Under the pieces are notes generated by a model. That model had not been told where the DNA came from and made no database searches. It saw only the letters and a program-made list of their open reading frames with translations. A stretch of 64,000 bases of DNA from Selaginella moellendorffii (lineage: Eukaryota > Plantae > Lycopodiophyta), in the NCBI RefSeq assembly GCF_000143415.4, contig NW_003314272.1, forward strand, positions 2,505,728-2,569,727. Direction: 5' to 3'. Shown here piece after piece: positions 1 to 55,674 of this stretch. Each line of letters opens with the position of its first letter. Positions within the stretch are counted from its first letter, which is position 1. A program made the position numbers and the translations under genes.

Positions 1-2403
1 AGCTGTGTGTCAGACAAGGCACGAACTCTCTATCTCTCCCTCGTACCTGCAGCTTTCCCAGATGCCAAGTCCCACAAATCCCGACCACTTCAATTATCTT
101 GTCGTGCATGAACTGCGGCCCAAACTCGTCTTCGTGCTCCTCTTCGTTCTGCCACAAGTCCACGCCGCCCATGTAGCTGCCGATGTTTGTGAACAAAACG
201 CCTTCCGTGTCCTGTCACGTTAAGAGACGAGGAGCTTCGACTTGCCAAAGAAACGCTCAAACAAACCTCTGGTATGATGATTTCCGAGCCGTCGACCTCG
301 ACACGGAGGTGCCAGGGGAGATCAGAGCAAGTTCTGTCCACGATGTCTTTCGCACCCTCCTTAGCATACAGCATTTTATTGAGGAACTGTACGTAAGAAC
401 ACAGCTTTAGACTTGATATCATAAACTACCAGGAGAGAGTACCTGATTGTAAAACTTTTCTGGATTCTCTTCACGAAGCATGTGGATATCTAGAGCCACT
501 TTTGCGTCGCACCCGATCCCTACATGGCAACCACCATCGTATTAGCAATACAAACGAAATGCAGTGAAGAGAACGTACCAAGGTAGTTATTCACGTACTT
601 CTCAGCCACAATCTCCTCTCCAGGCTTAGAGTAATTGTCAGAGATGCGAACAAGCCATCGATCAAGCATCGAAGCCGCTCCATGATCAACCTCGTGTAGC
701 ATGTTGTAAAGTCCACCTTGCCTTCCAACGGCAGCATATCCTCCCCCCCACGAAAGAACTCTGGCTAAGTCGTTCCCAGTTCCTATCGGCAAAATGGCTA
801 CGGGAGGAGGAGACTCGTAGTTACGTTTCTCAATCTCGTCCAAAACCCAGCCAACCGAGCCATCCCCGCCGCAAACCAGAATCCGAAAGTGCGCGAAGCC
901 TTTGAAAAACTCCAATCCCGCATCCGGTCCCTGAGCCTTACTAAGCTCAAACACCTGCATCAACCACGAGCAAGAACACATACGTAAGGCAAAAGGAAAA
1001 ACTCACTATCTAGCTGAAACGCATGCATAATGACCCTGAAAGAAGTAAAGAACGAGCCATACAACCTGTTCGTGCCAGCTGAACGTTCTGCCGCGTACGA
1101 AAAACCAGACTCAAGCATCCTGACTGTAACCCGACGCCCAGACTCACCCTGTTTATAGCAGTACCGAGTCAGTGTTCCTACGTTAACAATGCAATAAGCT
1201 CTGCACTTCTAAAAGCCGGCCGCGCAACGCAAACACCACACCAGCAGGCAAACTCAAGAAGACGTCGCGTACCTGGACGGGATTGAGCAGCATGTTTAAG
1301 TGTCGTCGAAGAGCCGTCCCATGCTGAGCTCCACTCTTGCGATTGATAAACACGAGCAAAGGCCTCGCATCCCCCGGAACTTCCACCAGCTGATACTTTT
1401 GCTTCGCCGAGGGACCGTGTACCACCTCCAGCTCGTTGTTGAGCTTTCCATTCGTCAACTCGTCAACTTCCTTAAGTTCTGCCGAGCTGGTTCGCATACT
1501 ATCTCCATCAGAAATCACTCCGTCGGTGGAGATCCTCGAAGCCTCGGAGGAGCTCGAAGCCAAAGCGTTTACATTTTCACTCGACCTCTTCCCCTTTTTC
1601 CTTCGTTTCCTGATCTGTCCACGCACGGACGAGGCCAGCTCGTTGGCTCCCTGAGTTATGGAGCTGATAAGCCCGACCATCCTCTTCCCGGTATCTTTCA
1701 CCCACAGCGGCGAGACGATCAACCTCTTGTGCATCCCAAGATCACAGAGCTCACTCGAGTTTCTCGAGTGGACGGAGTGGCAATCCACATGAACTAGGCG
1801 CTGACACCACATACACCGCCAGATCGCGCTTCCACCCAAGAACGACGCGTTGCAAGGCTCGTCACAGTGCATGCAGTAGGCCCTGTCCTCTGGGATATCA
1901 TCCACGTCCATCCACCTCTCGACCCACTGGTGGAGCAAACTGGAAGAGGACCCGGCCATGGCGACGCTCTTGCAATCCTTGGCCGCGCTCTTGGAGCAGC
2001 CCAGATGCGATGCCACGCCGCAGACGAGGCAGCGGTGGAGCGAGTAGACCGCGCCGGAGGAGACCGAGGAGAGGGATTGCGAGGGAGTGATGGCATCGAG
2101 GCAGACGAAGCACGTCGATGGCCGCGGCCGCGAGCTGCTGGATTCCTGGCTCCAGATGTGCGCGGTGCTTGGCGCCCTGACCCTGCCCCTGGATCGCCGC
2201 TTGGCGTGAGCTGCGGCCTTCATCCACTGGATAGCCAGCTTGCGCTGCCACTGGATCGCAACGTAGACGAAAAAGCCCGCCAGGAGGAGCGTGGCGACGA
2301 GCCAAGAAACCGCGGGGAGGATCGACTCGCCGGGCCGCGCGAGCGATGGGAGAGTGAGGCGAGGGAGGAAGTAGATCGGCGCGGCGCCATCGTCCTCCTC
2401 CAT
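1..2403 (-). CDS. DGK1: Diacylglycerol kinase, plant cluster I (DGK1/2-like); multi-exon, 3' end runs off the window
   Basis: ORF 1183-2403 has an N-terminal TM helix, two C1 domains and [11 protein letters not shown]. The next exon has the catalytic CGGDGSVGW and PIGTGNDL motifs; further exons give NNYLG and [13 protein letters not shown]. Confidence 0.92.
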
Positions 2404-45723: not shown

Positions 45724-45810
45724 TAACGAAGAAGAGTAAGTTCGTGTAAGACAATGCGAGGGTTTAGGGTTCTTATGATAGGTCTTGGCAGGGCGCCGCG
45801 AGGAGGAGCG

Positions 45811-48013
45811 AATGCTGCGACGCCGCCGGGCGCTGGAGCTCCTGCTGCTCCATCCGCGCGGCACGGTATCATGCTGGCAGCTCGCCCACAACAAGATGCC
45901 GCCGTGGGCGGCATTGGTCCCGCCGGGCGCCAAGATGTCGCGGCACCAGGGCCGCGTCGTCAATCAGCTCTTCCCGGTCGTCAATCTCCGCCTCGCGGTG
46001 AAGCGCTGCCCCGATGGAGCCCTGCCGGTGGAGGAAGGGTTCGTGGTCCAGCAGGGCACCAGGGCGGAGTCCTACTACATTACTCGTTCCAGGAATCAGG
46101 CCAAGGGCGTGGTGAGGAGGCTGCTCGAGGCGACGGAGGCGGCGTCGCCGGTGCTCACAGTCGCCGGGAAGAAGGTGAGCATCGTCAATCGCCAGGTTGA
46201 TCCGGCGGCCGTGGTGAGGGAGCTGGATCGAGCCTGGAAGCCGCTGGAGCGGCCGCTCAAGCAGAAGATCGTGCTCGGGGTGTTGGGGGCTGTCCGGAAC
46301 TGCTCGGCCGGGCTGCATTTCTTCCACTGGGCTCTCCAGCAGCCGGGGCTGGAGGTGGACACCGTGCTCTACAATGGTCTCGTGGAAATGCTTGTCAAGA
46401 GGGGCTACTTGGATCAAGCTCTGCGGCTCTACGAGAAGATGAAGAGGCCCGAGTTTGCGAGAGGGGGGTGTGCACCGGATGGAGAGACGCTGGCGCTGCT
46501 CGTCCGGCCCCTTTGCCGGTCGAACTTCGAGACGGCTCTCTCGCTCGTGAACGAGGCTCTGGACGGGAGGATGGAAGTTGGCGATGATCTCCTCCACGCG
46601 GTGATAGTTTGCCTTTGCAAGATGCAAGGAAGGCTGCCACTGTCGCTCAGGTACTTTCACAGAATGAAGAGCCCCGGTGATGAGACTTACCAGCTCTTGG
46701 TGAGGACCATGTCCAAGGAGCAATATGTCTACGAGGCCTACGATCTCATTGTCTCGATGGAGGTTGGCAAGGGGTTTCCCACGGACGACGTGACTTACCA
46801 CTTGCTCATCGCCGAGTTTTGCCGGAGGAAGGAACTGAGCCACGCTCATGTCCTGCTGCACGACTTCATGGACCGGGGAAGGATCCCGTCGGTGCTGAGC
46901 TTCAACGCGGTGCTGGAGCTGCTGTGCAACAAAGGCGACCGGGACGCGGCCGAGAAATCGTGGAACCTGTTCCAGTCCATGAAGAGAATGAGCGTGGCTC
47001 CCAACACGGTGACGTACTCCATCCTCTTGCAGGCGCTCTCGAATGGCAACCGTGTGGACCAGGCCATGATCCTCCTCGACGAGATGCTGCGGAGCGGCTG
47101 TATGCCGGGCTCCATCACTGGCAGCGCGCTCGTCTCGGCTCTGGCCAGGGCCGACCGGGTGACCGACGCTCTCGACTTGGTACTGAGGATGCACAGGGAG
47201 TTTCACACTCGGGTGGAGTTCCAGGCCACCTCCAACACAGTCTACGGCTTCCTCCGGCTCAAGCCGATGAAGACGTGCGTCAGCGCCCTCAAGAAGCTCC
47301 AGGAAGTGAACTTCACCCCGGACTTGGCCATGTACGACGTGGTGATCGAGATGCTGTGCGAGCGAGACATGATCAAGGCGGCCATGCTCTACTTCAGCGA
47401 CCTCAACCGGAGGAGCGTCCCGGACGTGAAGTCGTACGAGCCCCTGGTCCTGGCGTTTTGTCGAAACGGGAAGCTACCGGTGGCATACAAGCTCTTTCGG
47501 CACATGATCGTGAGGGGGTGCGATCCGAGCCTGACGATCTACAAGGCGCTCATCACGTCCTTCTGCCGCGGGGACAAGCTGGACGACGCGTGCAAGCTGC
47601 TCGAGTTTATGTTCAACAAGGACGTGTACCCGGACGAGGAGCTGTACAGGACGGTGCTGGAGGGGCTGGAGAGGACGGGCAATGGACAGGCTTTCGACGT
47701 GCTGAAGAACGCGCTCAAGGAGTCGGCGGATGGGAGCCCGGGCGAGGTGATGTTTAAGGCCGTGTTCAAGCTTCGAGGATGCGTGAGGCCGGCCAAGGAC
47801 TCCAAGGTGAAGAAGGCTCGCTCGCCCGGCAAGAAGCAGCCAGTGGCGCCAGCGGGAGGAGGAGCAAGGATGGAGAACGAGACCGAGGCTGCCGAAGTGG
47901 TGGACGTGGTGTCCGGGCCTCCTCCGGACGATACACCGGTGAAGGTGGTGCGCTTCCCAATGAGGTTTAGCGACTCGGACCCGGAGAGCACGTCCGGGGA
48001 CGAGAGCGACTGA
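45811..48013 (+). CDS. P-class pentatricopeptide repeat protein, single exon
   Basis: The 742-aa ORF 45785-48013 (first ATG 45811) has many PPR repeats (YNGLVEML, PNTVTYSILLQAL, IYKALITSFCRGDKLDDA). Confidence 0.93.
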
Positions 48014-48960: not shown

Positions 48961-50470
48961 CTACGATTTCCACACCGAGCAGAAGGTAACCGGCCGGTGC
49001 TTCCACAGCAAAACCAAGCAATTATCCTCGTTCCGAAGCTCCCAGTTCACGTCGTTCTTCTTCACCAGCATCCGGGCGGTCTCGACGATCTCGTCGTGCG
49101 GAGCCTCGGCCTCGAATCCGGCACTCCTCATCCTCGCGTTCCAGCTCTCGCGGCTCTCGCTCAGCTCCATGCCGCTGGCCAGCCTCGCCACCACGGACGT
49201 GGAGAACAAGTGCTCCATGATCTGCCGCTCCTCGCACTCGTGTCCTTTGAAAGCCCCGCTCATCGAGTCGAGGAAGCTCCAAAAGTGGCCAATCACCTCG
49301 CCAGCAACAGTGGAGAAGTCGGCGGACGTGTTGTCCGAGTCGTTCTCGCCAACGATCACCAGGTCGGGCTCCAGCTCCACGCGGACAAAGTTTAGAAACT
49401 CTTGTCTCTGGCTGCTGTCGATGTGGTTGAGCCGGAAGTGAGCACAAACCGCCAGGGCGTCGGGCTTGGCGATCGCGAACGCGTCCCGAGTGAGAGAATG
49501 CAGCGGTGTAGCGAGCATCCGCAGCTCCATGTTGAGTCCCATCACCTTCGCGAACCTTTCCAGCCTGCTTTTCACCTCGGAGCCAGAGCCGAGCCCCGAG
49601 CAAGGATCTTCGACGACGGTGAGCTTGAAAACGCTCGGAGGCCCCGACGGTCTCGTCGCAAGACCTTCGATCAATGTAGGCCACTGAGTCCCCTGAGAGT
49701 GTCCGATGTCGATGACATGTATCGCGTCCTTCCCTTCGAATGCATCCAGTAGCACTCCACTTGTCGCCGTGTAGACCACCTGGTACCACGGACTTAGATC
49801 GTGGAACTTGAGCAGAGCGTTGTGGAAGTTCTTGGCAGTGGCACTTGCGTCCAAGTTGTGATGATATGCTTGAGCGGCGGTTGGAGTCCCTGCGATTTTC
49901 CCGAACAGAGCCTTGAGACCGTAAGCTGCCAGCCTCTGGTTCGCGTCACCAGTGAGACATCCCAGATCGTTGAGCACCCACATCAAATGCTGTGTCCGTT
50001 GTACGTTGTTGGTTGCAATTGCCTGAACACAATTGTTGAGCAGCTGCAAAGCCCATTTGGACTCTTTCGCGGGCGCTTTGTCCTTAGATGACAGCTTCCC
50101 TGGAACTTTGAGTTCTTGACTGCGGTCTCGCTTGCCCAACGAGCTCCAATTCGGAGAGCATACTGGAGTAAGATGTCTGCGTTCGTCCTTGATATTTGAG
50201 GTCTGTAAAAGAAAGAACTATTAGATCGATCAATGGAAAAGCCGAACAGCTTACATCGATGGTTTTAAGAGTGTTGTCCACTTGGGTACCAGACCAAAGT
50301 TTGCTGTCGGCGAATTCAGTGCTGCTGGATGAAGCTTCTTCCGAGAAATCTAGAAGACCATCATCATTAATGTCGGAGTCTTCCATTTCCTCCAACCGAA
50401 ACTGAGGTCCCATATCACTTTCCTGCATCAGCGACCATAGCTCGTCCTGGAACAACTTTGGACTATCCAT
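48961..50470 (-). CDS. NSP1: GRAS transcription factor, NSP1-like, one intron (about 50204-50252)
   Basis: KWALQLLNNCVQAI..NNVQRTQHLMWVLNDL...GDANQRLAAYGLKAL, IHVIDIG..QGTQWPTLIE, and the C-terminal WKHRPVTFCSVWK are characteristic of the NSP1 clade. Confidence 0.85.
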
Positions 50471-50861: not shown

Positions 50862-53097
50862 TCAATTGCTCAGTTCCAACGCGCAGACACACTCGACGTG
50901 TGGCGTATGGGGAAACATATCTATAGGCTGGACGCTTAGAAGCCGGTAGCCACCAGCTAAATCGGAGCCATCCTGCAGAAGCGGAACAATAAGCGGAGAT
51001 AGTTCTCACGGCATCTTGTACCTTGGAGTGACATAGCACGTCAAGGTCCCGAGCACATGTTGCCGGATTGCAGGAAACATACACTACTCTTGCAGCGCCG
51101 GACTTCAGGATGAATTGTAGTAACTTCGGATGCATGCCAGGTCGATTCGGATCTGCGGAGAAATGTATCTCTTTTCATCAGGAACATTCCAAACAGCACT
51201 ACAATGAGAAAAAACCCAACCAGCAATAATGATATCGGGCCGAGGAAAATTTGCTCCGAATCCGGAAGTAAGTTTGTTCAGGTCTCCCTGAATAAATGTC
51301 GCGTTTAAAATGTTGTTTCTGTTCGCATTGCGCCGGGCGTTCGCAACAGCCTCCTGCACAAGTTCGTAGCCATAAACATGGTTGACCCTACACATGGAGG
51401 TTGATTCAACAAAAAACAGCCACAGTTTATATCTTACTTATTTGCCATTGAGAGGCCAATAGTGCCCGTGCCGCAAAACAAGTCCAGCATATTCATTTCG
51501 CTAGAGGCCTCCGTCAAGTTGCATGCTTTTTCCACAACTTCATATAGAACTTCTGCCTACAGAAGAATATTGAGTTAGATTGCGCAACAAAATCTAAGAC
51601 TAGATTTTACCTGTGATGTGTTCGTCTGAAAAAAAGAGTTGGCAGAAATCTCAAAAACGAGGCCACGCAAACGTTCCGTAATGGCTGGAGCTCCATACAG
51701 AAGATACTGTTTTTCACCAACCCCTGTGTTGGCCATTGAGGATGTCACATTATTAACAATGCTAGTCTGCAAGTTGGACATCAGGAACAAAATATAAAAG
51801 CATGTAAAAGAAATGTACCCACCACTTCAGAGTAAGTTACAAGCTTCTCTATCAATGGTTTTATCACACGGGGATGGTGCACCGAAGTTACGATATTAAC
51901 CATCACTTGCAGCTTCCCTGTGTGTTCGTCACTAGGTGAAAACGTATTAGGCAAGACCGAGAGGTATCACTCACAGACTTACTGGCCGGATCTCAGTGTG
52001 AGATGACGAAGAAACCCGCTATGCGTCTTTGTATCATATGCTGAAAGATCATTCCGATGAGTTTCGCAAAACGTATGCACGTCTAAGAGTATCTTGAGAA
52101 GAAAAAAAAGGAAAAAGCGATAAGAAAGTAGAACAGCATCTTGGCAGTCCCGCTCACCTGGTTCGCAACGTCATGTTGCAGAAGGCATTCTCTAATGTCC
52201 AGGATTTTGTCGTAGCTCCCAGGTACGTGGAGCCCAAGCGCAAAGTCCTCCTTAATATCTGGTGACTGGTTCTTCACAAACTCGTTGGGTGGCAGCCATC
52301 GAGTTCCAAATGAGAACTCCATCTAAGGGAAGTGCACGTCAGAACTCTTGAATGGAAACAACCGGGACTGCGTACCTGTGTCAGGAAAACGTTCAGCGTT
52401 TTAAGCCTCTATGCTAGAGGAGAATTTCACCTTGTTCCTGTAGTGGTACTGATTTGCACAAGGCAAAATCGGTTTCAAGTAGCTGCCACTGCCCGACTCC
52501 TCACTCCTCCCAAACCTCCCGACTCGTGAAATGAGCTGATGGACTTGGTCTTCCTTTGCAGCAAGCTGGGCCTCATAAGATAAGTTTTGTGTTCTACAGC
52601 CACCGCAGCTTTCAGCGTACTTGCACGGTGGAGTTACTGCATTGTCGTGTGTGACGATCGTCCGCAATTTTAGAGCCTAGAAAACAAAACCATCCAGCGT
52701 AAGACGATCCCACATTGCCAGAGAATTTTTCTTCTTTCTCTTATACCTCTGCATAGCTTCCCTTTCGCTTGGTGATGCGCGCTATCAAGCGTTCTCCCGG
52801 CAATGCCCTATCACACATGACCACATACCCGGTTTCCAAAACTTTGCACACGCCCTGTCCCTTGAATGCCAGGCTCTCGCAGACGAGCTCCAGCTCCTGG
52901 CCTCGCTTGGGGAAGAACGGTACCTTCTTAGCCGGCTGTTCCTCAGATTCCGCTGCTACTGCTGCCCGATTTGCCTCGGATGAATCCTCTATCTGGAGCA
53001 GCGTCGCCGACGAGAAAGCACAAGAATGCGAGATTTCGCGCATTCGAGGGCGTGGCCAAGAGAATGGGAATGCGCGCCATGGCGCCGCGACGACCAT
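50862..53097 (-). CDS. TrmA/RumA-family RNA uracil-5-methyltransferase with TRAM domain, multi-exon
   Basis: CESLAFKGQG, CKYAESCGGC, YRNK, ISANSFFQTN, LDLFCGTGTIGL, YVSCNPATCARD, PHTPHVECVC. Confidence 0.92.
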
Positions 53098-53238
53098 CTC
53101 TCCCAAAACCCTTGGAAAATATTTCGAGCTTTGAATCTCAACGGTTGCGATGTGTACAAGAGACCTGGACGGCTGAGATTTGCTCCCGGTAGCCAAAGGC
53201 GAAGAAATGGCCTTTGCTCTGTGTGGAATTTCTAGGTT

Positions 53239-53701
53239 ATGGCAGCGGCGTCACGAGCGCTATCTCCAGGTACGCGCTCGATCCGGGCACTCGCTTTTGT
53301 GTGGAATTTCCTCGCGCTGCGTGGATCTCCCAGCAATTGGGGCCGAAAGGCCGCCAATGCGAGTGATCTTGCCTCGCTTCGCGTTTTCTCGCTGGATCTG
53401 GCGAAGTCTCCTCTCTCACACACATTCTTGTGGGATGATCTCGTGCAGAAGAACAGAAGGTATTGGAACTGACGCAGCTCGCGGGCCTGGAAATTCGAGA
53501 GGACGTCTTTCTCACGGTACTGTCTCGAGCATTGCGATTTTTTTAGGGTATGGAAGCTTATAGATTGGAATGCAGCTGTGGGAGCTAATGCAGCTAGAAG
53601 CGTCACCTGTGTTGATACTCCAGCTTCTCAAGGAATTGGTTGGCACTGGTAGCGGGCTCGATGGATCCACAAACTCCGAGGCAAGTAGGAGCAGGAACTG
53701 A
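53239..53701 (+). CDS. MOZART2 (MZT2)-like microprotein, 74 aa; exons 53239-53269, 53449-53516, 53576-53701
   Basis: Canonical GT-AG splicing gives MAAASRALSPEEQKVLELTQLAGLEIREDVFLTLWELMQLEASPVLILQLLKELVGTGSGLDGSTNSEASRSRN*, which resembles the MZT2 core LS.EE.EL.ELAQ.AG..ID.DVF.IL.DLL.L...P..V.Q.LK. Confidence 0.72.
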
Positions 53702-53762
53702 TAGAGGAAAATCATAGGGACATAGTCGAGGAGGAAGAGAGCAAGAGATTAAACAGGAGGCG

Positions 53763-55674
53763 ATGGCGGGTGCTGCCTCAGCACTCTTTCTTTTAGATAT
53801 GAAGGGTCGGGTTTTAGTATGGAGAGACTATCGCGGAGATGTATCAGCAGCGCAGGCTGAACGCTTTTTTGCCAAGATACAAGAAGGAGAGGTACGTCCA
53901 GATTCTATTTTGTTGTTTGGTTGCTCTAGGATGTGCTCTTTTTTTTCTAGAGTGATTCAAGCTCCCAAGATCCTGTTGTTTTCGACGATGGAGTGACTTA
54001 TCTTTTCGTCCAGCACAACAACGTGTACGTAATGACGGCATCCAGACAAAATTGCAATGCTGCGAGTCTCCTTTTGTTTCTGCATCGAGTTATCGATGTA
54101 AAGTATCCTCATACTCTTTGGAGCTCTTAAGTTACGAGTGCTGGTTGAAATCGATATTAACCTGTGTTCTTTGTTTCTGTTTCAGGTTTTTAAGCATTAC
54201 TTTGAAGAGCTGGAGGAAGAGTCGTTGAGAGATAATTTTGTTGTAGTGGTAAATTTGTTTTTTCTCCGTGACTCTCCGGTGTTTGTTCTGTTTTCTCATA
54301 TTTTTCTAATTGCATTTGCAGTACGAACTTTTGGACGAGATGATGGACTTCGGATATCCTCAGTTCACGGAAGCAAATATTTTGAGCGAGTTCATCAAAA
54401 CAGATGCCTACAAGATTGAAATCACTCAACGTCCTCCCATGGCAGTGACAAATGCAGTATCCTGGCGTAGTGAAGGCATTCGCTACAAAAAGAACGAGGT
54501 ACAAAAACTACGGTTTTAATTGTCTCGCTTTTATCGTGGATTGCAGGTTTTTCTCGATGTTGTCGAAAGCGTCAACATTCTTGTTAATAGCAACGGTCAG
54601 CTGGTTCGCTCAGATGTTGTCGGTGCTTTGAAAATGCGAACATACTTGACGTATGTTTTTTTTTTTTTTTTTTTTTTTTTGCCTTTGATTCTTGCAGTTC
54701 TAAGCGGATAATCTTTTGTTTTCAGGGGTATGCCGGAATGCAAGCTCGGTCTCAACGACAGGGTTCTTCTAGAGGCACAAGGGCGCTCGACCAAGGGCAA
54801 AGCCATCGACTTGGATGATATCAAATTTCACCAGTAAGTCATTACACCTATTGTGCTACATTGCAGTCACCACGTTTTTGAGAATAGGTGTGTTCGGCTG
54901 GCTCGCTTCGAGAACGACAGGACAATATCCTTCATTCCTCCGGATGGTGCTTTTGATCTCATGACATATAGGCTAAGTACACAGGTTGTTACACGCCCTC
55001 GATGTTTGAGTTGATTTTCTGACCATTCCTTTGATCAGGTGAGACCTTTGATATGGGTGGAAGCTCAGGTCGAGAGACATTCTCGGAGTCGCGTGGAGTA
55101 CGCAGTGAAAGCCCGCAGCCAGTTCAAAGAACGCAGGTATTTGAATAGTTCGCATTTCCAGTCTCATATGTTTTCTCTACTCTTTGCAGCACGGCAACCA
55201 ATGTCGAAATTGAGCTGCCGCTTCCTGCAGATGCCACCACACCCAACGTGAGAACATCCATGGGCTCATCAGTCTATGCTCCCGAGAAAGAAGCCTTGGT
55301 ATGGAAGATCAAGTCATTCCCCGGCGGCAAGGTACTTCAATCGCTTCTTCTTTCAAACTCTCACGACTTTTTCGCTCAGGAGTACATGTTGAGAGCTCAA
55401 TTTGGCCTGCCAAGCATTGTGAGTGAGGAGAGTGTGCCAGAGAAGCGTGCGCCAATTCGAGTAAAGTTTGAGATACCTTACTTCACTGTTTCAGGAATCC
55501 AGGTGAGTTCTTCGAGCTAAAAGCTCCAAGGTTTTCGTTTGAGTTTGCGTTTGTTTCGCTTGCTTCCAGGTTCGCTATTTGAAGATCATAGAGAAGAGTG
55601 GCTACCAAGCATTGCCATGGGTGCGTTACATCACAACAGCGGGCGAGTACGAGCTAAGAATGATCCAATACTAG
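53763..55674 (+). CDS. AP1M: AP-1 adaptor complex mu subunit, multi-exon
   Basis: MAGAASALFLLDMKGRVLVWRDYRGDV, YELLDEMMDFGYPQ, GMPECKLGLND, FIPPDGAFDLM, SGYQALPWVRYIT. Confidence 0.96.

What the first reader, a model, noticed from the sequence alone, without database searches (positions are those of the whole stretch)
53239..53701. Hidden three-exon MOZART2 (MZT2)-like gamma-tubulin ring complex gene in a land plant
Seen: a clean GT-AG spliced 74-aa ORF between the TrmA and AP1M genes, absent from the ORF track. Established: land plants are known for MZT1-type GIP proteins, while MZT2, which binds GCP2, has been described mainly as an animal gamma-TuRC subunit. By eye the core LSPEEQKVLELTQLAGLEIREDVFLTLWELMQLEASPVLILQLLKEL aligns without gaps to the MZT2 helices and fits GIP/MZT1 less well. 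Inference: a plant lineage may keep an MZT2-GCP2 module, perhaps tied to flagellated sperm and basal bodies.
Basis: partly seen in the sequence, partly recalled or inferred. Interest (0 to 1): 0.82.

Follow-up and report, generated by a model that had tools for sequence, protein, structure and literature searches.

The report
Plant MZT2 gene upstream of AP1M
The spikemoss window holds a real, unannotated three-exon gene for a 74-residue homologue of MZT2, a small gamma-tubulin ring complex protein that papers say plants lack. In spikemoss, mosses and liverworts it sits 32-79 bases upstream of the clathrin-adaptor gene AP1M and appears on the same assembled RNA contigs.

Summary
Exons 53239-53269, 53449-53516 and 53576-53701 (+), both introns GT-AG, give a 74-aa ORF. 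It passes Pfam MOZART2 (34.7 bits, cut-off 23.3) and does not hit MOZART1. It aligns without gaps to solved MZT2B (E 1.5e-7). The model has three helices, and its best structural match is human MZT2 in the MZT2/GCP2 module.

Orthologues exist in mosses, liverworts and a second lycophyte. They share the exon structure (28-31/68/126-138 nt) and have dN/dS of 0.08-0.3. I found none in ferns, seed plants or algae, but the searches could have missed them.

Papers state that plants lack MZT2. Databases already hold bryophyte members as unnamed proteins, so the gene is a new member of a known family.

The MZT2 stop lies 61 nt before the AP1M start codon. This tandem, with a 32-79 nt spacer, recurs in Ceratodon (both paralogues), Physcomitrium, Marchantia and three unidentified plants. 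Spliced RNA contigs carry both ORFs, which suggests an ancient two-cistron unit.

In the window, RNA contigs support junction 2 directly. Junction 1 rests on homology only, and intron 1 is retained in contigs of three runs. GCP2 binding, translation and any link to sperm are untested.

The parts
53239..53269 (+). MZT2 exon 1, coding part: ATG plus 10 codons and 1 base. The phase-1 donor splits a conserved Glu codon.
   Evidence: Sequence. The homologous exon 1 is 28 nt with the same phase in Ceratodon and Marchantia. No spliced read across this donor was shown for this organism.
53270..53448 (+). Intron 1, 179 nt, GT..AG. It is retained in some RNA contigs, which carry a 9-nt deletion at 53291.
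   Evidence: Contigs of X1, X2 and X3 read through it although intron 2 is spliced in X1. If it is retained, an in-frame TGA at 53436-53438 leaves the MZT2 frame without an ATG (read from the sequence).
53449..53516 (+). MZT2 exon 2, 68 nt: helix 1, the following turn and the first half of helix 2.
   Evidence: Exon 2 is exactly 68 nt in Ceratodon (both paralogues) and Marchantia.
53517..53575 (+). Intron 2, 59 nt, GT..AG, phase 0.
   Evidence: The spliced junction is seen in the X1 contig and in the loose end of the X3 contig.
53576..53701 (+). MZT2 exon 3, coding part: end of helix 2, helix 3 and a poorly conserved tail, ending in TGA at 53699-53701. The exon runs on into AP1M.
53702..53762 (+). 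Intercistronic spacer, 61 nt, with no AATAAA.
   Evidence: Sequence. The equivalent spacer in other plants is 32-79 nt and not conserved in sequence.
53763..53889 (+). AP1M (AP-1 complex mu subunit) start codon and first coding segment, in the same exon as the MZT2 stop.
   Evidence: Contigs of all four runs join 53889 to 53949 and onward. The spliced product is a complete AP-1 mu protein.
52741..53105 (-). Its RNA contigs end at 53103-53105, so the region shared with MZT2 is about 130 nt.
   Evidence: contigs end at 53103-53105, adapter-flanked in X3; weak TRAM hit, 16.2 bits, below the cut-off.

Best explanation
This is a genuine orthologue of MZT2 (MOZART2/GCP8), a three-helix microprotein.

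Expression: in this lycophyte, as in mosses and liverworts, it is not a free-standing gene. It is the upstream ORF of a transcription unit whose downstream ORF is AP1M. Its three small exons make up the spliced leader of the AP1M mRNA. Long transcripts that start about 130 nt or less from the divergent upstream gene carry both ORFs.

Inferred: AP1M is translated mainly from shorter transcripts that start inside or after the MZT2 exons, and perhaps also by reinitiation or leaky scanning on the long form. Retention of intron 1, or a cassette exon in another species, removes the MZT2 start codon from the frame and may set how much MZT2 is made.

Shown here: homology, fold, purifying selection, conserved exon structure, the conserved tandem with AP1M, and co-occurrence on spliced RNA contigs.

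Inferred only: translation, GCP2 binding, and how AP1M is translated.
For: Family:
- Pfam MOZART2, 34.7 bits against a 23.3 cut-off, and no MOZART1 hit.
- phmmer against the PDB finds MZT2B at E 1.5e-7 and human MZT2A/B at about 1e-5.
- A plant profile finds MZT2A/B at about 1e-9 and no MZT1 chain.
- The AlphaFold2 model has helices at 10-21, 28-39 and 44-56 with core pLDDT near 90.
- The top Foldseek hit is 9h9p_C, human MZT2 docked with GCP2-NHD: TM 0.87 by target, rmsd 1.1 A, 42% identity.

A real gene:
- Orthologues at 45-62% identity occur in Ceratodon, Physcomitrium, Sphagnum, Marchantia, Riccia, Calypogeia and Diphasiastrum.
- Exon lengths are 28-31/68/126-138 nt with the same intron phases.
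- dN/dS is 0.075 for Ceratodon-like against Physcomitrium, and 0.08-0.34 for the other pairs where dS is measurable.

Coupling to AP1M, same strand, distance from MZT2 stop to AP1M ATG:
- window, 61 nt
- Ceratodon chr11, 72 nt, and its chr8 paralogue, 70 nt
- Marchantia, 56 nt
- Physcomitrium RNA contig, 69 nt, with both ORFs fully spliced
- contig L003, 58 nt; L010, 65 nt; L018, 79 nt; a further species, 32 nt
- The upstream neighbour differs between lineages (TRAM-type gene, prefoldin, GFO/IDH/MocA oxidoreductase), so only this pair is kept together.
- In the window, one X1 contig runs from intron 1 through exons 2-3, the spacer and AP1M exons 1-2.

Start-site heterogeneity: the X3 main contig starts at 53500 next to adapter remnants, the X10 contig starts at 53556 and the X2 AP1M contig starts at 53743.
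Against: - No read or contig shown here crosses junction 53269/53449. The contigs that reach upstream retain intron 1, which leaves the MZT2 frame without an ATG.
- Contigs cannot prove a single transcript. L010 even merges MZT2 with the divergent prefoldin gene.
- The long mRNA has 2-5 further ATGs between the two start codons in every species. Simple leaky scanning of the green-alga type is therefore unlikely, and how AP1M is translated from it is unknown.
- There is no ribosome-profiling or peptide evidence.
- In Diphasiastrum the annotated copy has no AP1M within 8 kb downstream, so the coupling is not universal.
- Plants are not known to have CM1 proteins such as CDK5RAP2, the partner that the animal MZT2/GCP2 module docks (table of PMC5371999).
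- A language-model look-alike search placed the moss orthologue beside mixed MOZART1/MOZART2 clusters. This is a weak lead only.
Confidence: 0.72

Rival explanations
1. The ORF acts mainly in cis, as a conserved-peptide upstream ORF that throttles AP1M translation. Its resemblance to MZT2 reflects ancestry, and the peptide has no role in the gamma-tubulin complex.
For: It always lies 32-79 nt upstream of the AP1M start codon on the same strand. Several ATGs lie between the two starts, so the ORF must reduce AP1M translation on long transcripts.
Against: - Conservation covers the whole three-helix core, and the last ~20 residues next to the stop codon are the least conserved.
- The core folds with high confidence into the MZT2 fold.
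- Diphasiastrum keeps a copy that is not followed by AP1M.
- Homologues in animals are trans-acting subunits (PMC7416306).
- A dual role is not excluded.
Confidence: 0.1
2. MZT2 and AP1M are two ordinary monocistronic genes that merely overlap. MZT2 mRNAs end at a poly(A) site inside AP1M, AP1M mRNAs start downstream, and the contigs joining them are assembly merges of overlapping transcripts.
For: - Assemblers do merge overlapping transcripts. L010 joins MZT2 with the opposite-strand prefoldin gene.
- Several AP1M contigs in the window start inside or after the MZT2 exons.
- Genome annotators call two separate genes in Ceratodon and Marchantia.
Against: - A 32-79 nt gap leaves no room for both a terminator and a promoter, and the window's spacer has no AATAAA.
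- Contigs from at least five species carry the spliced MZT2 ORF followed by several hundred bases of spliced AP1M.
- The tandem has survived in both Ceratodon paralogues and across liverwort, moss and lycophyte while the other flank changed.
Confidence: 0.15
3. In this organism the gene is a decaying relic. The ORF is intact by chance, but exon 1 is no longer spliced in, so no protein is made.
For: Contigs of three runs retain intron 1, and no exon 1-exon 2 joint was displayed.
Against: - The ORF is intact, both introns keep GT-AG, and exon 2 keeps its exact 68-nt length.
- All 15 columns that are invariant across the 13 aligned plant sequences hold in the window copy, which is one of those sequences.
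- The table of joints was truncated (6 not shown), so absence was not demonstrated.
- Depth in run X2 fits a spliced exon 1, but that is my inference.
Confidence: 0.03

Closest known systems
Animal MZT2A/MZT2B (MOZART2, GCP8), Pfam PF12926
   Same: It has the same Pfam family, a gapless alignment of about 50 residues at 30-40% identity, and the same three-helix fold. The best structural match is human MZT2 in the MZT2/GCP2-NHD module.
   Different: It is much shorter (74 aa against 98-167 aa in the solved chains and animal hits seen here), lacking the long basic C-terminal tail. It is encoded in the leader of another gene. Its partner and its role in plants are untested, and no CM1-type docking protein is known in plants (PMC5371999).
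Plant GIP1/GIP2 (MZT1, MOZART1, Pfam PF12554)
   Same: Both are small three-helix gamma-tubulin complex microproteins, and the MZT2 fold is described as MZT1-like (PMC7416306). A weak structural match to a 56-residue chain of a Xenopus gamma-TuRC entry appears at rank 10. I did not identify that chain.
   Different: There is no MOZART1 hit at E<=10 and no MZT1 chain in two PDB sequence searches. UniRef nevertheless labels at least two of the bryophyte orthologues 'Mitotic-spindle organizing protein 1', which looks like a mislabel.
Bicistronic nuclear loci of plants and green algae, such as CDC26-TTM3 in land plants (recalled from memory, Lorenzo-Orts et al. 2019, not read here) and the green-alga polycistronic loci (PMC7896298, PMC11892635)
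   Same: A small conserved protein ORF lies a few tens of bases upstream of a larger, unrelated ORF on the same mature RNA, and the arrangement is conserved over very long times.
   Different: I did not find this pair in those papers. PMC7896298 has no mention of MOZART, MZT or tubulin. The upstream ORF here contains internal ATGs, unlike the ATG-depleted upstream ORFs I recall for the green-alga loci, which I did not read. Alternative start sites and intron-1 splicing seem to add control.
Conserved-peptide uORFs (CPuORFs) of plants (PMC2075485)
   Same: It is a conserved peptide-coding ORF in the 5' leader of a conserved main ORF.
   Different: At 74 codons it is long. It is homologous to a known trans-acting protein and is least conserved at its C-terminus. 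It is not in the 2007 catalogue: that paper has no mention of adaptor, clathrin or tubulin.

Membership tests
MZT2 / MOZART2 (PF12926) | Scores above the curated Pfam gathering threshold for MOZART2 | tested here: met
   The score is 34.7 bits against a cut-off of 23.3, E 1.6e-8, residues 6-62 on profile positions 25-80 of 91. The plant orthologues also pass.
MZT2 / MOZART2 (PF12926) | Sequence similarity to experimentally solved MZT2 chains rather than to MZT1 | tested here: met
   The single sequence hits 7fad_B (MZT2B) at E 1.5e-7 and human MZT2A/B at about 1e-5. The plant profile hits MZT2A/B at about 1e-9. No MZT1 chain appears at E<=10.
MZT2 / MOZART2 (PF12926) | Three-helix MZT fold | tested here: met
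   The AF2 model has helices at 10-21, 28-39 and 44-56 with core pLDDT 87-93. The top Foldseek hit is 9h9p_C (MZT2): TM by target 0.87, rmsd 1.1 A over 48 columns, probability 0.99. The E-value is only 0.23 because the protein is so short.
MZT2 / MOZART2 (PF12926) | Binds the N-terminal helical domain of GCP2 specifically | not testable with these tools
   Only single-chain prediction is offered, and I did not retrieve this organism's GCP2. The property is known for human MZT2 (PMC7416306).
MZT2 / MOZART2 (PF12926) | Co-purifies with gamma-tubulin ring complexes | not testable with these tools
   This needs biochemistry.
MZT1 / GIP (PF12554) | Matches the MOZART1 profile | tested here: not met
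   No MOZART1 hit at E<=10 for the window peptide or at E<=0.01 for the orthologues.
Bicistronic (two-protein) nuclear mRNA | Two conserved protein-coding ORFs on one mature, spliced RNA | tested here: inconclusive
   Spliced contigs carry both ORFs in the window organism and in at least five other sources. Contigs can merge overlapping transcripts, so long reads are needed.
Bicistronic (two-protein) nuclear mRNA | Both ORFs translated from the same RNA | not testable with these tools
   No ribosome-profiling or proteomic data were on hand.
Conserved-peptide uORF (CPuORF) | Peptide-sequence-dependent control of the downstream ORF | not tested
   Only position and conservation were established here. 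The conservation pattern (helical core, not the C-terminus) does not favour a stalling peptide.

The most novel reading that the evidence does not exclude
The ancestor of land plants had a two-cistron mRNA in which the gamma-tubulin-complex microprotein MZT2 is translated from the leader of the clathrin-adaptor AP1M message. The unit would have been kept since the liverwort, moss and lycophyte lineages split, on the order of 450 million years by my recollection. It may have been lost, together with MZT2, in plant lineages that gave up centrioles and flagellated sperm. Plant MZT2 would then mark the gamma-tubulin complexes of discrete organising centres such as polar organisers and blepharoplasts.
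Probability: 0.4. Interest if true: 0.78.

Novelty: new variant of a known kind. Interest (0 to 1): 0.66.

Why it matters
[quoted passage not shown] This locus and its orthologues show otherwise. Bryophytes and lycophytes keep a well-conserved MZT2, and my searches also returned mollusc members, so the family is older and more widespread than stated.

That gives plant cell biologists a concrete candidate to test in Marchantia or Physcomitrium, both easy to knock out, for roles in the centrosome-like organising centres and the de novo centrioles of spermatogenesis.

The conserved tandem with AP1M adds a second point of interest. It would be one of very few deeply conserved two-protein nuclear transcripts in land plants, apparently tuned by start-site choice and leader splicing. 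It also explains why annotators miss the gene.

Tried and rejected
- The word-index protein search with the single peptide found nothing. The exhaustive phmmer search then found the orthologues. Two of its seven hits were false: a bacterial methylase and a WD40 protein.
- I tried to identify the organism by exact look-up of two single-exon ORFs of the window, a C1-domain protein and a PPR protein. Neither was on record. The Selaginella identity therefore rests on other agents' notes plus consistent features: 48-88 nt introns, 45% GC, and GRAS and PPR genes.
- I looked for prior description of a plant MZT2 or of this gene pair: gene identifiers and names, MZT2 with moss, MZT2 with LECA, bicistronic with bryophytes, the 2007 CPuORF catalogue and the green-alga polycistron paper. 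None describes it.
- The bacterial promoter and terminator scan is irrelevant to a eukaryotic locus and I ignored it.
- The ESM Atlas look-alike search gave mixed MOZART1/MOZART2 clusters at scores of 0.88-0.91. That is too weak to weigh against the HMM results.
- I rejected simple leaky scanning as the way AP1M is translated from the long RNA, because 2-5 ATGs lie between the two start codons in every species.
- I did not send an artificial exon 1-exon 2 join to the run-finding tool, because that tool asks for letters copied exactly from the window.

Full report
**What is in the sequence**

On the + strand, 53239-53269, 53449-53516 and 53576-53701 join into a 225-nt reading frame of 74 codons plus a stop. 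Intron 1 is 179 nt and intron 2 is 59 nt, and both are GT..AG.

The window is 45% G+C. The neighbouring AP1M gene has many introns of 48-88 nt. The window also holds GRAS and PPR genes, so it comes from a land plant. Notes by other agents of this scan name the genome as Selaginella moellendorffii. My own exact look-ups of two ORFs found nothing. I therefore take that identity as consistent with what I see, not as proven here.

**What the peptide is**

- Pfam returns one family, MOZART2, at 34.7 bits against a gathering cut-off of 23.3 (E 1.6e-8). The match covers residues 6-62 and so crosses both splice junctions. Nothing for MOZART1 appears even at E<=10.
- Against all PDB chain sequences, the best hits are MZT2B (7fad_B, E 1.5e-7, 52 residues without a gap) and human MZT2A/B.
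- A profile of 13 plant sequences hits human MZT2A/B at about 1e-9. It still hits no MZT1 chain.
- An AlphaFold2 model built on a 23-sequence alignment has three helices (10-21, 28-39, 44-56). The core pLDDT is about 90 and the tail is disordered.
- The top Foldseek match in the PDB is chain C of 9h9p, human MZT2 in the docked MZT2/GCP2-NHD module. The TM-score is 0.87 by target, rmsd 1.1 A and identity 42%.

The three family features I could test are met. Binding to GCP2 and association with the ring complex cannot be tested with these tools.

**Is it a real gene**

An exhaustive phmmer search of 1.84 billion representative proteins gave five true hits. Two profile searches extended the set. 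Named members are:
- mosses: Ceratodon purpureus (two paralogues), Physcomitrium patens, Sphagnum fallax;
- liverworts: Marchantia polymorpha (Mp_1g15950), two Riccia species, Calypogeia fissa;
- a lycophyte: Diphasiastrum complanatum;
- several molluscs.

The plant proteins are 45-62% identical to the window peptide. Fifteen columns are invariant across the 13 aligned plant sequences, the window peptide among them.

Genomic copies in Ceratodon and Marchantia have the same layout. Exon 1 is 28 nt and ends in phase 1, exon 2 is exactly 68 nt, and exon 3 is 135-138 nt. The window has 31/68/126.

Where synonymous divergence is measurable, dN/dS is 0.075-0.34.

The MZT2 stop codon ends at 53701. 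The AP1M start codon is at 53763, in the same exon, 61 nt later. The same tandem, on the same strand, recurs everywhere I could look except Diphasiastrum:

| Source | Gap from MZT2 stop to AP1M ATG |
|---|---|
| Window | 61 nt |
| Ceratodon chr11 | 72 nt |
| Ceratodon chr8 paralogue | 70 nt |
| Marchantia | 56 nt |
| Physcomitrium RNA-run contig, both ORFs fully spliced | 69 nt |
| JGI contig L003, spliced | 58 nt |
| Ceratodon-like RNA-run contig L010 | 65 nt |
| Unidentified plant L018 | 79 nt |
| Another unidentified plant, L004-L009 and L014 | 32 nt |

The gene on the other flank differs between lineages: a TRAM-type gene here, prefoldin in Ceratodon and an oxidoreductase in Marchantia. 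Only the MZT2-AP1M pair is kept together. In Diphasiastrum the annotated copy has no AP1M within 8 kb downstream.

**RNA evidence in the window organism**

The evidence is contigs of four RNA-like runs from four studies.
- A 705-nt contig of X1 covers 53268-53515. It skips to 53575, runs through the MZT2 stop, the spacer and the AP1M start, and is spliced into AP1M exon 2.
- The main X3 contig begins at 53575. Its loose end carries the last 16 bases of exon 2 behind adapter remnants. That confirms junction 2 and suggests many RNA 5' ends at about 53500.
- The X10 contig starts at 53556, and the X2 AP1M contig starts at 53743.
- Contigs of X1, X2 and X3 read through intron 1, with a 9-nt deletion at 53291. 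With intron 1 retained, an in-frame TGA at 53436 leaves the MZT2 frame without an ATG.

Junction 2 and co-occurrence with AP1M are therefore shown. Junction 1 in this organism rests on homology.

One of the unidentified plants shows a parallel. All six of its RNA-like contigs either include an extra exon of roughly 90 nt inside intron 1 or retain the intron, and either form takes the start codon out of frame. Leader splicing and start-site choice may thus control how much MZT2 is made, but this is inference.

**How it most likely works**

By homology, the peptide would pack its three helices against the N-terminal helical domain of GCP2 to form an MZT module on the gamma-tubulin complex, as in human cells (PMC7416306).

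I think it is translated from long transcripts of the MZT2-AP1M unit. AP1M would be translated mostly from shorter transcripts. The long form has 2-5 further ATGs between the two start codons in every species, which argues against simple leaky scanning.

The rivals are these:
- a purely cis-acting conserved-peptide uORF;
- two overlapping monocistronic genes whose contigs were merged by assembly, which does happen, as L010 shows;
- a relic in this species.

I rate them at 0.10, 0.15 and 0.03.

**Comparison with what is known**

Papers state that GCP8/MZT2 could not be found in plants (PMC2982109). They also say it 'is missing in plants' (PMC7416306) and that it occurs 'only in deuterostomes' (PMC6281477). 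A survey of spindle factors marks Mzt2 only in its first species column and cites Arabidopsis loci for Mzt1 but none for Mzt2 (PMC5371999). A 2026 paper reports MZT2 in chytrids alone among fungi (PMC13358043).

I found no paper that mentions a plant MZT2, the Marchantia gene identifier or this gene pair.

Databases, however, already hold the bryophyte proteins, as 'hypothetical' or 'uncharacterized'. Most carry a precomputed MOZART2 domain, and UniRef labels at least two of them 'Mitotic-spindle organizing protein 1'.

The gene family in plants is thus unnoticed rather than unknown to databases, and the Selaginella copy is unannotated. What seems new is the correction of the published distribution and the conserved tandem with AP1M.

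**Limits**

- The absence of fern, seed-plant and algal hits is weak evidence. The word index, the length window and the fact that such leader ORFs are rarely annotated could all hide them.
- The link to flagellated sperm is a correlation only.
- No translation or interaction data were available.

Noticed in passing
L004-L009, L014 (unidentified plant; JGI and ENA contigs): All six RNA-like contigs of this species either include an extra exon of roughly 90 nt inside MZT2 intron 1 or retain that intron. Either form puts the exon-1 ATG out of frame with the MZT2 helices. The productive exon 1-exon 2 splice can be modelled from L004 but was not seen. This parallels the intron-1 retention in the window organism.
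   Followed up: partly
window 53291: RNA contigs of three runs from three studies lack 9 nt here, inside MZT2 intron 1, relative to the window. This is probably a haplotype or strain difference.
   Followed up: no
window 53500 and 53103: In run X3, contig ends at 53500 (+ strand unit) and 53103 (upstream minus-strand gene) are flanked by sequencing-adapter remnants. This suggests that many RNA 5' ends lie exactly there. It would place a major AP1M start site inside MZT2 exon 2.
   Followed up: no
P0021 (Physcomitrium patens isoform X1, 92 aa): This annotated isoform has a 20-residue insertion in the middle of helix 2 compared with the 72-aa isoform. It probably comes from an alternative donor in intron 2 and is unlikely to fold as MZT2.
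   Followed up: no
P0007, P0028-P0032, P0040-P0044: Clear MOZART2 proteins occur in bivalves and gastropods, which are protostomes. The statement that MZT2 is restricted to deuterostomes is therefore outdated on the animal side as well.
   Followed up: partly
P0009, P0017, P0019, P0020 (UniRef names): UniRef names the Ceratodon (P0009) and Riccia fluitans (P0020) proteins 'Mitotic-spindle organizing protein 1', although they match MOZART2 and not MOZART1. The names printed for P0017 and P0019 are cut off after 'Mitotic-spindle'. This looks like a naming error that would hide the family.
   Followed up: partly
L002 (Diphasiastrum complanatum, KAJ7514562): The 115-aa gene model has an N-terminal 37 residues unlike any other member and a 4.2-kb intron. 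No AP1M lies within 8 kb downstream. It is either a relocated paralogue or a mis-modelled first exon.
   Followed up: partly
L001, L019, L010 (Ceratodon): In both Ceratodon paralogous regions a prefoldin gene lies head-to-head with MZT2. One RNA contig (L010) joins the spliced prefoldin and MZT2 ORFs on opposite strands. This shows that contigs can merge neighbouring transcripts.
   Followed up: no
window 45785-48013 (+), 48961-50139 (-), 1183-2403 (-): Long single-exon ORFs encode a PPR protein, a GRAS-domain protein and a C1-domain protein. Neither the PPR nor the C1 product was on record by exact look-up.
   Followed up: partly
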